From: Mobula hypostoma
Taxonomy: Eukaryota
Length of the DNA: 64,000 nt
Assembly (NCBI RefSeq): GCF_963921235.1
Contig: NC_086126.1
Location: forward strand, 12,028,001-12,092,000
Direction: 5' to 3'
Shown in pieces: positions 14,046 through 61,478 of the stretch. Position numbers and translations under genes: made by a program. The stretch's first letter is position 1; the number at the start of each line of letters is the position of its first letter. The notes beneath the pieces were generated by a model. The model saw only the letters and a list, made by a program, of their open reading frames with translations. It ran no database searches and had not been told where the DNA came from.

Positions 14046-14317
14046 NNNNNNNNNNNNNNNNNNNNNNNNNNNNNNNNNNNNNNNNNNNNNNNNNNNNNNN
14101 NNNNNNNNNNNNNNNNNNNNNNNNNNNNNNNNNNNNNNNNNNNNNNNNNNNNNNNNNNNNNNNNNNNNNNNNNNNNNNNNNNNNNNNNNNNNNNNNNNNN
14201 NNNNNNNNNNNNNNNNNNNNNNNNNNNNNNNNNNNNNNNNNNNNNNNNNNNNNNNNNNNNNNNNNNNNNNNNNNNNNNNNNNNNNNNNNNNNNNNNNNNN
14301 NNNNNNNNNNNNNNNNN
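14046..14317. other. Assembly gap (N run)
   Basis: Run of n characters. Confidence 0.99.
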
Positions 14318-14339
14318 NGGGGAGACCCTGATTTACGTG

Positions 14340-17181: not shown

Positions 17182-20100
17182 TTAACAACGTGTGAATGTG
17201 TCCGTCCCCGTCCTGTTTCCAACGGAGAAAGACACAGGTGAGTAGAGACACGAGTCAGTGGAACTGGGAACATTCAGTTTCGCGTTTCACAGTGTGATCC
17301 AGGCTGCAGAATTCCCGCTTCATTTCCCCTGGTCACTTCATGTAATTGTCACATCGGAGTCCGGGTAACTTCAGCGTTTCCACCCAGTAATCCCAAACAG
17401 GGCGTTGTGAGGCAGGCAGAAGGGGTTAGAGTGAAACTCCCTCTTTGCTGCCGTATCACACACTCCTGAGGTCAGACACAGAGTGAAGCTCCATTCACAT
17501 CGTCCCATCACACACTCCCGGGGTCAGACACAGAGTGAAGCTCCCTCCACATCGTCCCATCACACACTCCCGGGGTCAGACACAGAGTGAAGCTCCCTCC
17601 ACACCGTCCCATCACACACTCCCGGAGTCAGACACAGAGTGAAGCTCCCTCCACGCCGTCCCATCACACACTCCCGGGGTCAGACACAGAGTGAAGCTCC
17701 CTCCACATCGTCCCATCACACACTCCCGGAGTCAGACACAGAGTGAAGCTCCCTCCACGCCGTCCCATCACTCACTCCCGGGGTCAGACACAGAGTGAAG
17801 CTCCCTCCACACCGTCCCATCACACACCCCCGGAGTCAGACAGAGAGTGAAGCTCCCTCTACACTGTCCCATCACACACTCCCGGGATCAGACACAGAGT
17901 GAAGCTCCCATTACACACACCCAGGGCAGGAACAGCTGAGGTTACGGACAGAGTCTCGGACTAACACTTTGGTGAATTACGATGTCACCCGTCCCATGTG
18001 ACCGGGCTCCTGGAATTCTGGGCCCTCTCTCTCGGTGCGGAAAATTTCCCAGCGGTTTGCACCGGAGCTGAACCCTTGCGGAGTAGCCGCATTTCAAGTT
18101 GGAATCCCTCCACTTCTGCAGCGCCTTTCACCAGCCAAGGGTGTCCTGGAGTTCGTTGTCACTCTCGCTCCCCACCGCCCCTTCATCAGGACGGGACTCA
18201 CTGCTCATTGTCTCCCCTCTCATTCCCATCCCCGCCCCCACCCTCACCACCTCTCCCATTGTCGGCGCTTCCCTAACACCGACACTCCCTCCGCTCTCAC
18301 CACCCACTCACGCAGCTCGACCCTCCCTCCTCATCCATCCACCTCTTTACAACGCTTCATCTTCATCCGCCCCTCCCATAGGACGACGCTGCCCACCCCT
18401 CACTGACCCCTACACCCCCGCTCACTGTACGACGCTCACTCACTACCCCTTCCCTACGGTGGCGCTTCCTCTTCACAGCCCCTCCCATGGCGCGGCGCTC
18501 CCTCGCACAGTGCAGCGTCCCCTCAGTGCTCAGATCTCAGGGGTGGGATTTGACCGCACGACCCCGTGGATTGTGGCGCGGTGAACAGTCTGGCGCACGG
18601 TCCCCTGGATCTGCGCGTCTACGCAAGAGATTCAGGACTTACCGGGTCGCCCCCCAGTTGCTGTCGACGGGGGAATTTGATCGGAGTAACCACATGCTCA
18701 TCAAAGTATCGTTTCCATTTATGACAAACATCTGTCCGGTCCACACTGTGACACTCCCCCGGACCGAATCTGAGCACAGAAAGTATTTTAAAATACTGTT
18801 ACTACCGTCCCTCAGTACAGGCCCTGTCGTAGCACAGGCCCTCCCGCAGTGCAGCGGTCCCACATTGTGACACTTCCCCCGCATCACCCCTCTGATAGCG
18901 CGACAGTCTCTCAGTACCTTGTTCAAAAAAAGGTAGTAGGGATAGTCCGGGTAATTATAGACCAGTCAGCCTTACGTCTGTGGTGGGAAAGCTGCCGGAA
19001 AAGATTCTTAGAGATAGGATCTATAGGCATTTAGAGAATCATGGTCTGATCAGGGACAGCCAGCATGGCTTTCTGAAAGGCAGATCGTGTCTAAAAAGCC
19101 TGAAAGAGTTCTTTGAGGAGGTGACCAGGGATATAGATGAGGGTAGTGCAGTGGATGTGATCTATATGGATTTTAGTAAGGCATTTGACAAGGTTCCACG
19201 CGGTAGGCTTATTCAGAAAGTCAGAAGGCATGGGATCCAGGGAAGTTTGGCCAGGTGGATTCAGAATTGGCTTGCCTGCAGAAGGCAGAGGGTGGTGGTG
19301 GAGGGAGTACATTCAGATTGGAGGTTTGTGACTAGTGGTGTCCCACAAGGATCTGTTCTGGGACCTCTACTTTTCGTGATTTTTATTAACGACCTGGATG
19401 TGGGGGTAGAAGGGTGGGTTGGCAAGTTTGCAGACGACACAAAGGTTGTTGGTGTTGTAGATAGTGTAGAGGATTGTCAAAGATTGCAGAGAGACATTGA
19501 TAGGATGCAGAAGTGGGCTGAGAAGTGGCAGATGGAGTTCAACCCGGAGAAGTGTGAGGTGGTACAGTTTGGAAGGACAAACTCCAAGGCAGAGTACAAA
19601 GTAAATGGCAGGATACTTGGTAGTGTGGAGGAGCAGAGGGATCTCGGGGTACATGCCCACAGATCCCTGAAAGTTGCCTCACAGGTGGATAGGATAGTTA
19701 AGAAAGCTTATGGGGTGTTAGCTTTCATAAGTTGAGGGATAGAGTTTAAGAGTCGCGATGTAATGATGCAGCTTTATAAAAATCTCGTTAGGCCACACTT
19801 GGAGTACTGTGTCGAGTTCTGGTCGCCTCACTATAGGAAGGACGTGGAAGCATTGGAAAAGGTACAGAGGAGATTTACCAGGATGCTGCCTGGTTTAGAA
19901 AATATGCATTATGATCAGAGATTAAGGGAGCTAGGGCTTTAGTCTTTGGAGAGAAGGAGGATGAGAGGAGACATGATAGAGGTGTACACGATATTAAGAG
20001 GAATAGATAGAGTGGACAGCCAGCGCCTCTTCCCCAGGGTCCACTGCACAATACAAGAGGACATGGCTTTGAGGTAAGGGGCGGGAAGTTCAACAGGGAT

Positions 20101-21151
20101 ATTAGAGGAAGGTTTTTTACTCAGAGAGTGGTTGGTGCGTGGAATGCACTGCCTGAGTCAGTGGTGGAGGCAGATACACTAGTGAAGTTTAAGAGACTAC
20201 TAGACAGGTATATGGAGGAATTTAAGATGGGGGCTTATATGGGAGACAGAGGGAGGGAGCCGCAGTGCCCCGGGAACTCGGGCAGAGAACGCGTGGATTA
20301 GCAACGTACCTGAGGTCCACTTTACCACAAACCCAAAGGTCGGCTGCTCGATATTGACCTGGAATCCGATTAGATCTCCTTCAACCTGCTGCCTAACGCT
20401 GGACACTGCGGATTTGTAGGTGCCTGTCAGGGTCCCGTCCTCGTTCATCATGATGTTCGCCATCGAATTCAGTTCATTAATCCAGCAGCCGGCCAGAGTC
20501 GGGACCTGAAATCAAGGTCACCTCATCGAATCTCGCCGGTCACCAGCAACTCCGTAGCGCCCACCTTTCAGGAAAATCCCACAGTTTATCAGGGCCAGCG
20601 ACGCAACCTTAAGGTGCAGTCACCACTGGTGTGGAGGAAGCATGGGGGGGGGGGGGCGTCATTCTACACAGCATGATCCCAGAGACTGGGTACAGCCGCA
20701 ATCCTGCCGAAGGAGTTCCGGCTGTCTGTCCTTCGGCGCGGAGCCCCGGTCACCGAGGGCTCGCAGTCGCAACCGGACTCGATAGATCCAGGAGTAGGAG
20801 GCGGACTTAACAAATCTCCGTGATTTCCGCGTAAGGACCCTGACTGATCTCCCGTCTCTCTAACCCAGGGTTGACCGGTCAGTGACGGGGAACAGGAACC
20901 CTGTCTGATTCTCTCTCTCTCTAACCCAGGGGTCGGAGAAGGGGAGCAGGAACCCTGGCTGAATCCCCACCTCTCTCAAACCCAGGGGTCACGGGGCAAC
21001 GATGGGGAGTTAATTCCCAACGCAAATATGAATCAATTGCCCCTAATTTTCCCGCAGTAATCCTATTTCCACGACTTACCACAATGGAACAAGAGGCACC
21101 GACGTTGCCCAGCGCCAACAGGAGAAACAGGCGGGGAAGTTTGCGCAGCAT
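17182..21151 (-). CDS. avd: Avidin-like protein A (4 exons: 21151-21080, 20505-20310, 18769-18643, 17212-17182; 141 aa)
   Basis: All introns GT-AG with phases 0/1/2. Spliced protein MLRKLPRLFLLLALGNVGASCSIV-VPTLAGCWINELNS...GTYKSAV...QPTFGFVVKW...SVTVWTGQ...MWLLRS...NWGATR-TGTDTFTRC has a signal peptide and the avidin motifs WxNxLxS, GxYxSAV, QPTFGFxVxW, WLLRS. Confidence 0.9.
17455..17915 (+). repeat. 52-bp minisatellite, about 9 units, in avidin A intron 3
   Basis: Unit GTCAGACACAGAGTGAAGCTCCCTCCACACCGTCCCATCACACACTCCCGGG at 17471, 17523, 17575 ... 17887. Confidence 0.95.
18920..20240 (+). mobile_element. CR1 LINE fragment inserted in avidin A intron 2
   Basis: QHGF...DFSKAFDKV...GVPQGSVLGP...KFADD; stop at 19733; absent from paralogs B and C. 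Confidence 0.92.
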
Positions 21152-54552: not shown

Positions 54553-57458
54553 GTGCTGCGGAAACTTCCCCGCCTGAGTCTCCTTTTGGCACGGGGCATC
54601 GTCGGTACCTCTTCGTCGGTGGTAAGTCGTGGAAATGGGATTACTGCAGGAAAATTAGGGGCAATTGATTCTTATTTGCGTTGGGAATTTGCCTTCGAAA
54701 CGGAGGTGAGGCCCGCCAAGTGTCCTGCAAGCGCCCAATCATCGCACCCACCCTGCGCACAACTTTGTCGGTCACATCCTTGTGATCACGCCGCCTCTGC
54801 CATCGCTGCCCCGTTACCCCTGGGTTAGAGGGGGAGGGGTATCAGGGAGGGTTTCTTCTCCCCATTACTGACCGCTCAGCCCTGGGTTAGTTTCAACCAG
54901 GGGTCCTGCATCCCATCGCCACCCGGTGACCCCTCGCTCAGAGAGAGGGGAAATCACCCAGCCTTTCTGCTCCCCATCGTTGACCGGTCACCTCTGGGAT
55001 AGAGAGGGGGGGGGGGAATCAGCCAGAATCCTTACGCGTAGGTCACAGAAAATGAGCATTGTTAATTGCGCTTCCCACTCCTGAATCTATCGAGTTCGGT
55101 TGCGACTGCAAGCCCTCAGGGGGCTCCGTGCCAAAGGACAGACAGCCGGAACTCCTTCGCCAGGATTGCGGCTGTACAGTCTCTGGGATCATGCTGTGTA
55201 GAATGCCCCCCTCACCCCCTACCCCATGCTTCCTCCAAAGCAGTGGTGACTGCACCTTAAGGTTGCGTCCCTGATGTCCCTGATAAACTGTGGGATTTTC
55301 CGGAAATATAGGAGGCGGGCGCCACAGAGATGCGGCTGACCGGCGAGATTCGATGAGGTGACCTTGCTTGCAGGCCCAGACTCTGACGGGCTGCTGGACT
55401 AATGAGCTGGGGTCGACGGCGTACATCAAGAAGGACGAGGACGGGACCCTGCGAGGCTTCTACATTTCGGCAGTGTCCAGCGCTGAGACTCCGGTTGAAG
55501 GGGAACTAATCGGATTCCAGGTCGATATCGAGCAGCCGACCTTTGGGTTTGTGGTAAAGTGGACCTCAGGTACGTTGCTATTCCGCCCGTTCCCTGCCCG
55601 AGCTCCCGGGGCTCTGCGGCTCCCTCCCTCTGTCTCCTCGTCTCCACCTGAGGTGACGCACCCCCGCGGGTGGGAGACAGCGCAGGAGCGCTGCAGTGTG
55701 TGGGGGGGGGGCAGTACTGAGTCTCTCTCAGTCCTGTAGGAGGGGGCGCCACCGAGACGGCCCAGCGCTCTGGGAAGGACGGCAAAACCGAGGGCATGCC
55801 ATGCTGTGGGATGGGGGTCTGAAGAGGGAGCGCGAGGTGGGGGCGACACACTGTGGGAGAGGAAGTCAGCGGGGAGCGCCCCGCTGTGGGAGGGGCGGTA
55901 CTGAGGGAGCGCTGCACTGCGGGAGGGGGACTGTGCTACGGGAGGGCCTGTACTGAGGGTCGGTAGTAATAGGTCAGACATTATTTTAAAATTCTTTCTG
56001 TGCCCAGAGGAGGTCCGGGGGGATGTCTCAGTGTGGACTGGACAGATGTTTGAAGACCAAACTTTGAAGACCATGTGGTTAGCCCGATCACATTCCTCCG
56101 TCGACAGCAACTGGGAGGCGACCGTGTAAGTTCTGAATCTCTTGGGCAGACGCGCAGATCCGGGGGACTGTGCGCCAATCTCTTCACCGCGCCCCAATCC
56201 CACTCCTGAGATCTGAGCTCAAGACTGCACCGTGCGAGGGAGCGCCACACTATGGGAGGGGCTATGAAGAGGAAGGGTTATTGAGTGAACGTCGTACAAT
56301 TGGGGGGGGTAGGTGTCAGTGAGGGGTGGGTAACGCCGCCCTATGGGAGGGGCTGATGAAGAGGAAACGTTGTACAGAGGTGGATGGATGAGAAGGGAGG
56401 GTCGAGCTGCGTGAGTGGGTGGTGAGAGCGGAGGGAGTGTCGGTGATAGGGAAGCGCCGACAGTGGGAGAGGTGGTGAGGGTGGGGGCGAGGAGGGGAGT
56501 GAGAGGGGAGCCAATGAGCAGTGAGTCCCGTCCTGATGAAGGGGCGGTGGGGAGGGAGACTGACAACGAACTCCAGGACATCCTTGGCTGGTGAAAGGCG
56601 CTGCAGAAATGGAGGGATTCCACCATGAAATCCGGCTACTAAGCAAGGATTCAGCTCCGGTGCAAACGGCTGGGAAATTCTGCGCACCAGAATTCCAGGC
56701 GCAAAGGGCTTTGTCCCCGGTCCCTGCGTCACATGTGACGGGTGACACCGTGATTCAGCAAAGTGTTATTCTGAGATTCTGTCCATAACCCCAACTGTTC
56801 CTGTCCTGGGTGTGTGTGATGGCACGGTGGGGAGGGAGCTTCACTCTGTGTCTGACCCTGGGAGTGAGTGATGGGATAGTGTAGAGGGAGCTTCACTCTG
56901 TGTCTGACCCCGGGAGTGTGTCATGGGACGGTGTGGAGGGAACTTCACTCTGTGTCTGGCCCCGGAAGACTGTGATGGGACGGTGTAGAGGGAGCTTCAC
57001 TTTGTGTCTGACCCCGGGAGTGTGTCATGGGACGGTGTAGAGGGAGCTTCACTTTGTGTCTGACCCCGGGAGACTGTGATAGGACGGTGTAGTGGGAGCT
57101 TCACTTTGTGTCTGACCCCGGGAGTGTGCGATGGGACGGTGTGGAGGGAGTTCCACTCTAACCCCTTCTGCCTGCTCACGACTCCCTGTTTTGTGATTAC
57201 CGGGTGGGTACTCCGATGTGACAATTACATAAAGTGACCGGGGGAAGTGAAGCGGGAATTCTCCAGACTGGGTCACTCTGTGAAAGGCGGATCTGAATGT
57301 TCCCAGTTCCACCTGAGTCGTGTCTCTAATCACCTGTCTCTTGCTCTGTTGGAAACAGGACGGGGATGGACGTGTTCACTCGTTATATCGAGAAGTGTGG
57401 ATCCACGGACGGAGACGGAAGTGAGCGGAAATATGACCCCAGCAAGGAAGGCTCGTAG
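54553..57458 (+). CDS. Avidin-like protein B (exons 54553-54621, 55374-55569, 56008-56125, 57359-57458); start codon is GTG
   Basis: GT-AG introns, frame intact: VLRKLPRLSLLLARGIVGTSSSV-AQTLTGCWTNELGS...GFYISAVSS...QPTFGFVVKWTS-EEVRGDVSVWTGQ...MWLARS...NWEATV-TGMDVFTRYIEKCGSTDGDGSERKYDPSKEGS. Confidence 0.8.
56820..57160 (-). repeat. 52-bp minisatellite, about 6 units, in avidin B intron 3
   Basis: GGGAGCTTCACTCTGTGTCTGACCCCGGGAGTGTGT... period 52. Confidence 0.93.
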
Positions 57459-58578: not shown

Positions 58579-61478
58579 ATGCTGCGCAAACTTCCCCGCC
58601 TGAGTCTCCTGTTGGCGTTGGGCATCGTCGGTGCCTCTTGTTCCATTGTGGTAAATCGTGGAAATAGGATTACTGCGGGAAAATTAGGGGCAATTGATTC
58701 ATATTTGCGTTGGGAATTAACTCCCCATCGTTGCCCCGTGACCCCTGGGTTTGAGAGAGGTGGGGATTCAGCCAGGGTTCCTGCTCCCCTTCTCCGACCC
58801 CTGGGTTAGAGAGAGAGAGAATCAGACAGGGTTCCTGTTCCCCGTCACTGACCGGTCAACCCTGGGTTAGAGAGACGGGAGATCAGTCAGGGTCCTTACG
58901 CGGAAATCACGGAGATTTGTTAAGTCCGCCTCCTACTCCTGGATCTATCGAGTCCGGTTGCGACTGCGAGCCCTCGGTGACCGGGGCTCCGCGCCGAAGG
59001 ACAGACAGCCGAAACTCCTTCGGCAGGATTGCGGCTGTACCCAGTCTCTGGGATCATGCTGTGTAGAATGACCCCACCCCCACCCCCAATGCTTCCTCCA
59101 CACCAGTGGTGACTGCACCTTAAGTTTGCGACGCTGGCCCTGATAAACTGTGGAATTTTCCGGAAAGGTGGGCGCTACGGAGTTGCTGGTGACAGGCGAG
59201 ATTCGATGAGGTGACCTTGATTTCAGGTCCCGACTCTGGACGGCTGCTGGATTAATGAACTGAATTCGACGGTGACCATTACGGTGGACAAGAACAGGAC
59301 CCTGACAGGCACCTACAAATCCGCAGTGTCCACAAATGGGACATGGGCTGAAGGGGATCTAATCGGATTCCAGGTCGATATCGAGCAGCCGAACTTTGGG
59401 TTTGTGGTAAAGTGGACCTCAAGTACGTTGCTAATCCGCCCGTTCCCTGCCCGAGCTCCCGGGGCTCTGCGGCTCCCTCCCTCTGTCTCCTCGTCTCCAC
59501 CTGAGGTGACGCACCCCCGCGGGTGGGAGACAGCGAAGGAGCACGGCAGTGTGTGGGGTGGGCAGTACTGAGACTCTCTCAGTCCTGTGGGAGGGGCGCC
59601 ACCGAGACGGCCCAGCGCTCTGGAAAGGACGGCAAAACCGAGGGCATGCCATGCTGTGGGATGGGGGTCTGAAGAGGGAGCGCGAGGTGGGGGCGACACA
59701 CTGTGGGAGAGGAGGTGAACGGGGAGCGCCCCGCTGTGGGAGGGGCGGTACTGAGGGACTGTCACGCTATCAGGGGGATGATCCGGGGGAAGTGTCACAA
59801 TATGGGACTGCTGCACTGCGGGAGGGCCTGTGCCTGTACTGAGGGACGGTAGTAACAGTATTTTAAAATCTTTTCTGTGCTTAGAATCGGTCTGGGGGAG
59901 TGTCACAGTGTGGACCGGACAGATGTTTGGAAAAGATACTTTGATGACCATGTGGTTACTCCGATCAAGTGTCTCCGTCGGCAGCAACTGGGGGGCGACC
60001 CGATAAGTCCTGAGTCTCTTGCGTAGACGCGCAGATCCAGGGGACCGTGCGCCAGACTGTTCACCGCGCCACAATCCACGGGGTCGTGAGGTCAAATCCC
60101 ACCCCTGAGATCTGAGCACTGAGGGGGCGCTGCCCTGTGCGAGGGAGCGCCGCGTCATGTGAGGGGCTGTGAAGAGGAAGCGCCACGCTACGGAAGGGGT
60201 ATTGTGTGAGGGTCGGACAGTGGGCGGGGGTGTAGGGATGAGTGAGGGGCGGGTAGCGTCGCCCTATGGGAGGGGCGGTTAAGGAGGAAACGTTGTACAG
60301 AGGTGGATGGATGAGGAGGGAGGATCCCGCTGCGTGAGTGGGTGGTGAGAGCGGAGGGAGTGTCGGTGACAGGGAAGCGCCGACAATGGGAGAGGTGGTG
60401 AGGGTGGGGGCGGGGAGGGGAGTGAGAGGGGAGTCAATGAGCAGTGAGTCCCGTCCTGATGAAGGGGCGGTGGGAAGGGAGAGTTACAACGAACTCCAGG
60501 CTGGTGAAAGGCGCTGCCGAAATGGAGGGATTCCACCTTGAAATCCGGCTACTCAGCAAGTATTCAGCTCCGGTGCAAACGACGGGGAAATTCTCCGCTC
60601 CGGGAGAGAGCCCTGAGGGTCCGGAATTCCAGGCTTTGTTCCCGGTCCCTGGGTCACACCGTGATTCACCAAAGTGTTAGCCCGAGACTCTGTCCGCAAC
60701 CCCAACTGTTCCTGCCGTGGGTGTGTGTGATAGAGGGAGCTTCACTCTGTGTCTGACCCCGGGAGTGTGTGATGGGACGGTGTAGAGGGAGCTTCACTCT
60801 GTGTCTGACCCCGGGAGTGTGTGATGGGACGGTGTGGAGGGAGCTTCACTCTGTGTCTGACCCCAGAAGTGTGTGATGGGACGGTGTGGAGGGAGCTTCA
60901 CTCTGTGTCTAACTCGGGGAGTGTATAACAGGACAGTGTAGAGGGAGTTCACTCTGTGTCTGACCCCGGGAGTGTGTGATGGGACGGTGTGGAGGGAGCT
61001 TCACTCTGTGTCTGACCCCAGAAGTGTGTGATGGGACGGTAAAGAGGGAGTTTCACTCTGTGTATGACCCCGGGAGTGTGTGATGGGACAGTGCAAAGGG
61101 AGCTTCGCTCTGTGTCTGACCCTGGGAGTGTGTGATACGACAGCAAACAGGGAGTTTCACTCTAACCCCTTCTGCCTGCTCACAACTCTCTGTTTTGGGA
61201 TTACCGGGTGGAAACGCTGAAGTTACCCGGACTCCGATGTGACAATTACATAAAGTGACCGGGGGAAGTGAAGCGGGAATTCTCCGGCCTGATCACTCTG
61301 TGAAAGGCGGATCTGAATGTTCCCAGTTCCACCTGACTCGTGTCTCTGATCACCTCTCTCTTTCTCCGTTGGAAACAGGACGGGGATGGACGTGTTTCGG
61401 CGTCGTAAAGAGCAGTGTGGATCCACGGACGGAGACGGAAGTGAGCGGAAATGTGACCCCAGCAAGGAAGACTTGTAG
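58579..61478 (+). pseudogene. Avidin-like gene C (exons 58579-58650, 59227-59422, 59885-60002, 61379-61478) with mutated exon 3 donor
   Basis: Open frames in all exons, but the exon 3 donor reads CG|ATAAGT where A has CG|GTAAGT; read-through gives CGA TAA. Confidence 0.75.
60720..61165 (-). repeat. 52-bp minisatellite, about 8 units, in avidin C intron 3
   Basis: Same unit as 17455-17915, inverted. Confidence 0.93.

What the first reader, a model, noticed from the sequence alone, without database searches (positions are those of the whole stretch)
59227..59422. Avidin exon 2 differs almost only at replacement sites while intron 1 is near-identical
Seen (manual codon alignment of A 20505-20310 versus C 59227-59422): 18 of 65 codons change amino acid and only 2 differ purely synonymously. 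Changes cluster in strand 2 and its turn (MANIMMNEDG vs TVTITVDKNR) and in the lid loop after SAVS (SVRQQV vs TNGTWA). About 350 bp of intron 1 (58656-59010 vs about 20720-21074) looks identical. Known: exons evolving faster than introns is typical of immune and toxin genes under diversifying selection. Inference: ligand or pathogen-driven diversification, possibly with gene conversion homogenising the intron. Copy C also gains N-glycan sequons (NST, NRT, NGT).
Basis: partly seen in the sequence, partly recalled or inferred. Interest (0 to 1): 0.75.

Follow-up and report, generated by a model that had tools for sequence, protein, structure and literature searches.

The report
Mosaic avidin gene copies in devil ray

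Summary
Exon 2 of copy C (59227-59422) and copy A (20310-20505, minus strand) differ at 26 of 196 bases: 18 replaced codons and 2 purely synonymous. Intron 1 has a 356-base identical run (58656-59011).

The contrast between a fast exon and a slow intron is mostly made by gene conversion:
- An A-C conversion tract covers the 5' two thirds of intron 1.
- A second tract, between B and C, runs from the end of exon 2 into intron 2.
- Exon 2 as a whole (13.3%) is no more diverged than ordinary non-coding DNA (11.1%).

What is unusual is the clustering. Twenty-one of the 26 differences sit in 48 bases that encode strand beta-2 with its turn and the L3,4 lid loop, mostly on the C lineage.

Pairwise dN/dS for exon 2 is about 1.7-2 and not significant (p=0.20). 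Three-sequence site-class tests favour omega above 1 at p about 0.01, which is suggestive only.

Copy C has lost its intron-3 splice donor (GT to AT), and a low-depth RNA-like contig reads through it to a stop. Copy B lacks its ATG. Copy A is nearly unchanged in Mobula birostris.

The parts
59227..59422 (+). Copy C exon 2 (the finding): 65 codons plus 1 base; encodes beta-1 to beta-5 of the avidin barrel
   Evidence: Pfam Avidin E=1e-11
59269..59298 (+). Divergent patch 1 (TVTITVDKNR in C, MANIMMNEDG in A, TAYIKKDEDG in B): strand beta-2 and the following turn. There are 10 A-C differences, one per codon, 9 of them replacements
   Evidence: strand 38-43 and turn 44-47 in the model of A
59332..59349 (+). 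Divergent patch 2 (TNGTWA in C, SVRQQV in A, SAETPV in B): the L3,4 lid loop, aligned to chicken avidin residues 39-44. There are 11 A-C differences in 18 bases
58651..59022 (+). A-C gene-conversion tract in the 5' part of intron 1 (2 differences in 372; identical run 58656-59011). Its counterpart in A is about 20709-21079
   Evidence: p=6e-15 against the non-coding background
59350..59745 (+). B-C gene-conversion tract covering the 3' end of exon 2 and the 5' part of intron 2 (14 differences in 396). Its counterpart in B is about 55497-55890
58579..58650 (+). Copy C exon 1 (ATG and signal peptide)
59885..60002 (+). Copy C exon 3. The intron-3 donor at 60003-60004 is AT, not GT, so CGA TAA is read in frame if the intron is kept
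   Evidence: The NCBI model P0005 ends at ...NWGATR. An RNA-like contig runs 59885-60116 without differences
61379..61478 (+). Copy C exon 4 (beta-8 and a Cys-rich tail). The ORF is intact, but no splice into it was seen
20310..20505 (-). Copy A exon 2, the comparison partner
17182..21151 (-). Copy A, the whole gene: exon 1 21080-21151, exon 2 20310-20505, exon 3 18643-18769, exon 4 17182-17212. All introns are GT-AG. It equals the NCBI protein P0001 except for a 3-base difference in the donor chosen for intron 1
54553..57458 (+). Copy B: exon 1 54553-54621 (GTG where A and C have ATG), exon 2 55374-55569, exon 3 56008-56125, exon 4 57359-57458. It is transcribed and spliced as modelled
   Evidence: An RNA-like contig of 531 bases has joints 55569/56008 and 56125/57359, depth 95

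Best explanation
The window holds a three-copy avidin locus of Mobula hypostoma. Copy A is inverted; copies B and C are in tandem. The locus evolves by duplication plus repeated interlocus gene conversion. Copy C is a mosaic of three parts. From the end of exon 1 through the 5' two thirds of intron 1 it was recently homogenised with A. From just after the lid-loop codons into intron 2 it was homogenised with B. Between these, the framework of exon 2 is A-like. Two short patches between the tracts encode strand beta-2 with its turn and the L3,4 lid loop. They have either escaped homogenisation or changed since it. They carry replacement changes at about five times the local neutral rate, mainly on the C lineage. 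The likeliest cause is past selection for a changed surface and lid on a fold that was kept. The inward-facing residues of beta-2 stay hydrophobic (V, I, V), the outward-facing ones all became Thr, and three N-glycan sequons appear. Shown here: the gene models, the two tracts, the clustering, the rate excess, the dead donor in C and the transcript contigs. Inferred: that selection rather than mutation or conversion mechanics caused the excess, and its timing. In this genome C is now crippled: its intron-3 donor is lost, so the product ends before beta-8. Whatever selection acted on C is probably historical.
For: Family and fold: Pfam Avidin; PDB avidin and xenavidin sequence hits; AF2 model of A with pLDDT 90 and Foldseek match to xenavidin at TM 0.89. 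Species: P0001 and P0005 are M. hypostoma proteins, 100% identical to A and C over exon 2. Conversion: 356-base identical A-C run, P<0.0002; B-C tract at 3.5% against a 14% background, p=3e-10; run of about 60 consecutive informative sites with A=C, then a switch of partner. Clustering: 21/48 differences against an 11.1% background, p=1e-8; the rest of exon 2 has 5/148, below background, p=0.001. Lineage: C-specific changes are 12/48 in the patches against 58/1135 in gap-free non-coding DNA, p=4e-6. Replacement bias: by parsimony, 59 replacement and 8 synonymous changes over the three branches, p=0.002-0.016; fast class with omega above 1 at p=0.007, and p=0.014 with multi-nucleotide changes allowed. 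C defect.
Against: Only three DNA sequences were available. Pairwise omega for exon 2 and for the whole CDS is not significantly above 1. The patches coincide with the least constrained columns of the whole avidin family (entropy above 3 bits at most patch positions), so lack of constraint explains where changes fall, though not their rate. Adjacent double substitutions are about twice the expected number in non-coding DNA as well, so a clustered-mutation process exists here. C replaces a Gly that is 90% conserved in the family (G47R) and has lost a splice donor, which is what decay would look like. In the lid loop C shares G, T and A with a stingray protein and not with A or B. That suggests the patch is old rather than newly evolved.
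Confidence: 0.6

Rival explanations
1. Neutral islands. The three copies are much older than their 10-15% non-coding divergence suggests, because conversion keeps homogenising the locus. The loop-coding patches are unconstrained. Once they had drifted apart they blocked heteroduplex formation, so they kept diverging at the neutral rate. No positive selection is needed.
For: There are two significant conversion tracts with different partners, and both stop short of the divergent patches. Identity along the locus is patchy, from 76% to 100%. The patch positions are the most variable in the family. C's lid loop keeps residues seen in a stingray orthologue. A fast neutral rate class alone recovers most of the M2a signal: lnL goes from -816.2 to -808.4.
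Against: Letting omega vary in the fast class still improves the fit (LRT 7.2, p=0.007; 6.1, p=0.014 with multi-nucleotide changes). Third codon positions in the patches changed less (3 of 16) than first or second positions (9 of 16 each), although a neutral island should show equal rates. The excess is lopsided toward the C branch: 12 C-specific changes against 5 on A and 3 on B.
Confidence: 0.22
2. Decay of a dying copy. C lost function (dead donor, truncated product), and its exon 2 changes are relaxed-constraint noise, possibly inflated by clustered multi-nucleotide mutations.
For: The donor GT became AT with an in-frame TAA. The read-through contig has low depth, 4 against 95 for B. G47R hits a 90% conserved Gly, and the C-terminal Cys conserved in the other rays is lost. 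Adjacent substitutions are in twofold excess everywhere.
Against: Neutral decay cannot exceed the neutral rate, yet C-specific change in the patches is 25% against 5.1% in C's own introns (p=4e-6). The other 148 bases of exon 2 are more conserved than the background. All four exons lack frameshifts and stops. Beta-2 keeps a perfect in/out hydrophobic pattern.
Confidence: 0.1
3. Patch import. The two patches were copied into C by short conversions from a further, more distant avidin paralogue lying outside this window.
For: Conversion is demonstrably active at this locus. The differences come in dense, sharply bounded blocks.
Against: No sequence within 3 mismatches of either patch exists elsewhere in the 64 kb. 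A translated search finds only three exon-2 copies. Protein searches with exon 2 of C find no protein with these loops in any species. In patch 1 every codon differs from A by exactly one base, which is unlike a diverged donor.
Confidence: 0.05
4. Assembly artefact. The identical intron stretch is a chimera of A and C reads.
For: Short-read contigs break inside the identical tract between 58529 and 58827, as expected wherever two copies are identical.
Against: A 413-base contig (58827-59239, no differences) links the identical tract to C-specific bases downstream. Another contig (58220-58529) is C-specific upstream. A and C differ at 9 positions within 59023-59239.
Confidence: 0.03

Closest known systems
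Chicken avidin / avidin-related (AVD/AVR) gene family
   Same: A clustered multi-copy avidin locus with four exons and three introns per gene. Exon 2 is the most variable exon (58% variable sites), and high recombination within the family has been proposed (PMC1082904). From memory only, because the paper is not held: Ahlroth et al. 2001, BBRC 285:734, reported introns more conserved than exons and an excess of replacement changes among AVRs.
   Different: This is a cartilaginous fish, not a bird. There are three copies, one of them inverted 33-41 kb away across a tRNA-Glu repeat field. The introns are much longer (0.4-1.5 kb). The divergence is concentrated in two very short patches. Two of the three copies carry start or splice lesions.
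Xenavidin, zebavidin and chicken avidin (solved structures)
   Same: Same fold: TM 0.82-0.89, rmsd 1.6-2.2 A, 31-43% identity. The same ligand-contact residues are kept in copy A: N33, L35, S37, Y53, V57, W86, S94, T96, W98, W115, L117, W127, D135 in P0001 numbering.
   Different: Biotin binding by the ray proteins is untested. B carries S94D and L117A at contact positions. C lacks beta-8 if its transcript is read as found.
[quoted passage not shown]
   Same: Homogenised flanks with sharply bounded divergent segments. The abstract listed reads such islands as candidates for selection for new function.
   Different: Here the island-bearing copy is currently defective, and there are too few sequences to separate selection from conversion mechanics.

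Membership tests
Avidin family (Pfam PF01382) | Profile match above the curated cut-off | tested here: met
   Exon-2 peptides of A, B and C score 44-48 bits against a cut-off of 24
Avidin family (Pfam PF01382) | Eight-stranded antiparallel beta-barrel | tested here: met
   AF2 model of A: pLDDT 90.4 and eight strands. Foldseek top hits are zebavidin, xenavidin, avidin and streptavidin, probability 1.00. As transcribed, C would lack strand 8
Avidin family (Pfam PF01382) | Vertebrate avidin gene structure: four exons and three introns | tested here: met
   compared with PMC1082904. The exon 2-3-4 joints of B are confirmed by an RNA-like contig
Avidin family (Pfam PF01382) | Conserved biotin-contact residues | tested here: met
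   All are present in A. In C they are present through exon 3. B has D at the S94 position and A at the L117 position
Avidin family (Pfam PF01382) | High-affinity biotin binding and tetramer formation | not testable with these tools
   Needs recombinant protein
Genes under diversifying (positive) selection | dN/dS significantly above 1 for the region | tested here: not met
   Exon 2: omega 1.68, p=0.20. Mature CDS: omega 1.69, p=0.085. NG86 Fisher p=0.2-0.46
Genes under diversifying (positive) selection | A class of sites with omega above 1 that survives controls for rate variation and multi-hit mutation | tested here: inconclusive
   p=1.4e-5 (M2a vs M1a), 0.007 and 0.014, but from three sequences only, with asymptotic p-values, at a locus picked because it looked odd
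Genes under diversifying (positive) selection | Continued rapid change between orthologues | tested here: not met
   A in M. hypostoma and A in M. birostris differ at 2 mature residues, and both patches are identical. No C-type protein was found in another species
Interlocus gene conversion | Identical runs longer than chance, with a change of partner along the gene | tested here: met
   356-base A-C run and 101-base B-C run, each P<=0.0002; site-pattern string
Interlocus gene conversion | Donor, direction and date from orthologous loci | not testable with these tools
Unprocessed pseudogene (copy C) | Disabling lesion with transcript evidence | tested here: met
   The donor is AT at 60003-60004. 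A contig runs from 59885 through the donor to 60116. The NCBI model stops at the resulting TAA
Unprocessed pseudogene (copy C) | Frameshifts or stops inside exons, and neutral evolution | tested here: not met
   All four exons are open. Exon 2 outside the patches is more conserved than the introns

The most novel reading that the evidence does not exclude
Copy C is, or recently was, a neofunctionalised avidin. Its exposed beta-2 face and lid loop were rebuilt under positive selection and decorated with three new N-glycans next to the biotin pocket. This would give a changed ligand range or let the protein escape a microbial counter-measure. Selection would also keep these patches from being erased by conversion from A and B. 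The donor loss would then be a recent or still polymorphic event in M. hypostoma.
Probability: 0.15. Interest if true: 0.55.

Novelty: new member of a known kind. Interest (0 to 1): 0.33.

Why it matters
Avidins are thought to defend eggs and inflamed tissue by withholding biotin. Outside birds, their gene families have hardly been studied, and a search found no paper linking avidin, biotin binding and elasmobranchs. This locus shows that a ray has a small, actively recombining avidin cluster whose copies differ mostly in the lid loop and one exposed strand. If real, that would point to diversification of ligand or surface properties. It is also a clean teaching case of how a conversion tract in an intron can make an exon look as if it evolves faster than neutral.

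Tried and rejected
- **Orthologous DNA.** The look-up of encoding contigs returned gene tables but no DNA for M. birostris, Hypanus sabinus, Hemitrygon akajei and M. hypostoma, and one look-up was never sent. No multi-species codon analysis was therefore possible.
- **Chicken papers.** Ahlroth 2001 and Laitinen 2002 are not held, and searches found no paper restating their intron/exon result. That comparison rests on memory.
- **Patch donor.** No donor for the patches was found in the window or among proteins.
- **Intron 1 as an RNA element.** Rfam finds nothing in or near the genes, and B is only 76-89% like A and C there. A conserved intronic RNA element was rejected.
- **Scan statistic.** In the A-C alignment some 18- and 30-base non-coding windows (near 60634 and 61948) are as dense in differences as the exon patches. 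These lie in repeat or indel-rich, poorly aligned DNA. The patches are therefore not the unique maximum of the raw scan.
- **Read laying (one call allowed).** Most difference rows were hidden. I could not read which letters the related species (organism B) carries in exon 2. Its only contig there differs from C at 30 positions plus 2 gaps, and A differs from C at 32 over the same 327 bases. That fits an A-type copy, not a C-type one, but a hole proves nothing.
- **Expression of A.** No RNA-like run of the species holds exon 2 of A. This is not proof of silence.
- **Sequon gain.** The three sequons in C are only weakly unusual by composition shuffling (P=0.03-0.06).
Full report
**What is there**

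The window carries three avidin-family genes.
- **Copy A** lies on the minus strand: exons at 21080-21151, 20310-20505, 18643-18769 and 17182-17212.
- **Copy B** lies on the plus strand: 54553-54621, 55374-55569, 56008-56125 and 57359-57458.
- **Copy C** lies 4 kb downstream of B: 58579-58650, 59227-59422, 59885-60002 and 61379-61478.

A self-comparison of the window shows a large inverted duplication. It pairs the A region with the B/C region, and B and C form a tandem pair.

The exon-2 peptides match Pfam Avidin at 44-48 bits against a cut-off of 24. They also align to chicken avidin, AVR4 and xenavidin chains. An AlphaFold model of A has mean pLDDT 90.4 and eight strands, and it superposes on xenavidin at TM 0.89 and rmsd 1.8 A.

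Protein searches return two M. hypostoma proteins named "streptavidin-V2-like" that are 100% identical to exon 2 of A and of C. The source is therefore this devil ray.

**Checking the observation**

- Exon 2 of A and C aligns without gaps. Eighteen codons are replaced and two differ only synonymously.
- There are 26 base differences in 196. Ten fall in 59269-59298 and eleven in 59332-59349, leaving 5 in the other 148 bases.
- The longest identical A-C run is 356 bases (58656-59011). In 5000 permutations the null mean was 63 and the maximum 138.
- C has three N-X-T sequons in exon 2, whereas seven other ray avidins have none or one in the whole protein.

**Why the intron looks slow**

Divergence between A and C varies strongly along the gene.

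| Region | A-C differences |
|---|---|
| Intron 1, 5' 372 bases | 0.5% |
| Intron 1, 3' 202 bases | 4% |
| Exon 2 | 13.3% |
| Start of intron 2 | 7% |
| Intron 3 | 10% |
| 3' flank | 15% |

The non-coding background outside the promoter-to-intron-1 block is 231/2084, or 11.1%. Against that background exon 2 is unremarkable (p=0.35), and it is intron 1 that is abnormal (p=6e-15).

Informative-site patterns show about 60 consecutive sites where A equals C and B differs. After that the patterns are mixed.

A second tract joins B and C from 59350 to 59745. It has 14 differences in 396 against 186/1323 in the other introns (p=3e-10), and its longest identical run is 101 bases (P=0.0002). In that interval A has 1.3 kb of unrelated sequence.

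The 5' 123 bases of exon 2 therefore sit between one tract shared with A and another shared with B. There B and C differ at 29%, twice their background (p=4e-5).

B is only 76-89% like A and C in intron 1, so a conserved intronic element is not the explanation. Rfam finds nothing there.

Short-read contigs of the source genome link the identical tract to C-specific bases on both sides. This argues against an assembly chimera.

**What the divergent patches are**

Two lines of evidence place the patches: the alignment to chicken avidin and the model of A.
- **Patch 1** is strand beta-2 (P0001 residues 38-43) plus the following turn (44-47).
- **Patch 2** is the L3,4 lid loop (59-64, aligned to avidin residues 39-44).

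In a 73-sequence family alignment most patch positions are among the most variable columns, with entropy above 3 bits. The inward-facing 39, 41 and 43 and the turn Gly 47 are conserved; Gly 47 is G in 90% of sequences. In C the inward positions stay hydrophobic (V, I, V), the outward ones are all Thr, and Gly 47 is Arg.

**Is there more change than neutrality allows?**

*Pairwise and whole-gene tests.*
- NG86 for exon 2 (A-C) gives dS 0.081 and dN 0.160, so omega is about 2. For the mature CDS omega is 1.66 (A-C), 1.72 (A-B) and 1.84 (B-C).
- A maximum-likelihood codon model on the three-taxon tree has only one unrooted topology, so recombination cannot mislead it through a wrong tree. It gives omega 1.69 for the mature CDS (LRT against 1: p=0.085) and 1.68 for exon 2 (p=0.20).
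- None of these values is significantly above 1.

*Site-class tests.*
- M2a beats M1a (LRT 22.4, p=1.4e-5; 28% of sites).
- Most of that gain is rate heterogeneity. A null model with a fast neutral class reaches lnL -808.4, against -816.2 for M1a.
- Freeing omega in the fast class still gains 7.2 (p=0.007, omega about 6).
- With double and triple nucleotide changes allowed, the gain is 6.1 (p=0.014).

*Counts.*
- Parsimony on the three branches gives 59 replacement and 8 synonymous changes (p=0.002-0.016, depending on the assumed synonymous fraction).
- In strictly gap-free non-coding DNA the three branches are similar: A 4.4%, B 6.1%, C 5.1%.
- In the patches, C-specific changes are 12/48, or 25% (p=4e-6). 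A has 5 and B has 3, and four sites differ in all three copies.
- Adjacent double substitutions are about twice the expected number in both non-coding and coding DNA. A clustered-mutation process therefore exists here and tempers the codon-model results.

**State of the three genes**

- **Copy A** is intact, and NCBI models it (P0001). Its M. birostris orthologue P0007 differs at two mature residues and is identical in both patches. No RNA-like run of the species holds its exon 2, which is not proof of silence.
- **Copy B** has GTG where A and C have ATG, an Arg in the signal peptide core, and changes at two ligand-contact positions. Even so, a 531-base RNA-like contig at depth 95 splices its exons 2, 3 and 4 exactly as modelled.
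- **Copy C** has AT in place of GT at the intron-3 donor, so CGA TAA follows in frame.
  - The NCBI model P0005 ends there.
  - A 267-base contig at depth 4 starts exactly at the exon-3 acceptor and runs through the donor to 60116 without a difference.
  - As transcribed, C would lack strand 8.

M. birostris has two tandem B-type proteins that differ at three residues, and no C-type protein was found there. Contigs of a related species have M. birostris-like letters in exon 4 of B. They match C's promoter and intron 1 at 97%. Over exon 2 they match only about as well as copy A does: 30 differences plus 2 gaps, against 32 differences between A and C.

In the lid loop C shares G, T and A with the Hemitrygon protein, where A and B differ. 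This hints that the patch is old rather than newly made.

**Reading**

Conversion is demonstrated, and it explains the near-identical intron. The dense, C-biased, replacement-rich change in two loop-coding patches is not explained by neutral point mutation on the time scale set by the introns.

Past selection on surface and lid is the best single explanation. Two alternatives cannot be excluded with three sequences: a neutral-island model, in which unconstrained patches became refractory to conversion, and clustered mutation.

The pattern belongs to a known kind. The chicken AVD/AVR cluster has the same four-exon genes, with exon 2 the most variable exon and recombination proposed within the family (PMC1082904). 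As I recall from a paper I could not open, its introns are more conserved than its exons.

I found no paper on avidins of cartilaginous fishes. The scan's other note on this window (s1-142829) calls the locus a cluster of three spliced avidin-like genes. That agrees with the models built here.

Noticed in passing
window 1143-46685 (ten sites: 1143, 3849, 11652, 26587, 29494, 33950, 36064, 42057, 44616, 46614): Nine tRNA-Glu(TTC) genes and one tRNA-Ala(TGC)-like copy are embedded in repeated 1-2 kb segments that fill the space between avidin copy A and copies B/C. This is either a tRNA gene array or a field of tRNA-derived repeats.
   Followed up: partly
window 54553-54555: Copy B has GTG where A, C and the M. 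birostris B-type proteins have the start ATG, yet B gives the best-supported spliced RNA-like contig (depth 95). NCBI places an avidin-domain model of 308 residues over this region, so another 5' exon or start may be used.
   Followed up: partly
window 18919-20241 (minus-strand gene A, intron 2): About 1.3 kb in A replaces the 256 bases that B and C share at 59491-59746. It is probably a mobile-element insertion with an accompanying deletion.
   Followed up: no
window 56700-57300 and 60700-61300 (intron 3 of B and C; counterpart in A about 17450-17920): A tandemly repeated unit of roughly 50-105 bases has word depth of 10^4-10^5 or more in DNA and RNA-like runs of two species. It is a very high-copy repeat family.
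   Followed up: no
window 17182-17184 vs 61406-61408: Copy A ends at a TAA where C has AAA. This removes the 21-residue Cys-rich tail that B, C and the M. birostris and Hemitrygon proteins keep. The M. birostris A orthologue ends at the same place.
   Followed up: partly
M. birostris locus of P0004 and P0006 (no DNA served): The two tandem avidin genes of M. birostris encode proteins that differ at only 3 of 160 residues, whereas the tandem pair B/C in this window differs at about 30%. Either recent homogenisation or recent duplication happened in M. birostris.
   Followed up: partly
window 58735-58900 (intron 1 of C; same in A): Three imperfect copies of a unit of about 55 bases (cctgggtt.gagaga...cagggttcct) lie inside the identical tract. 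Read depth there is about tenfold above the neighbouring DNA, so the unit is repeated elsewhere in the genome.
   Followed up: no
window 14046-14318: An assembly gap of 273 N lies at the edge of the A-side duplicated segment.
   Followed up: no
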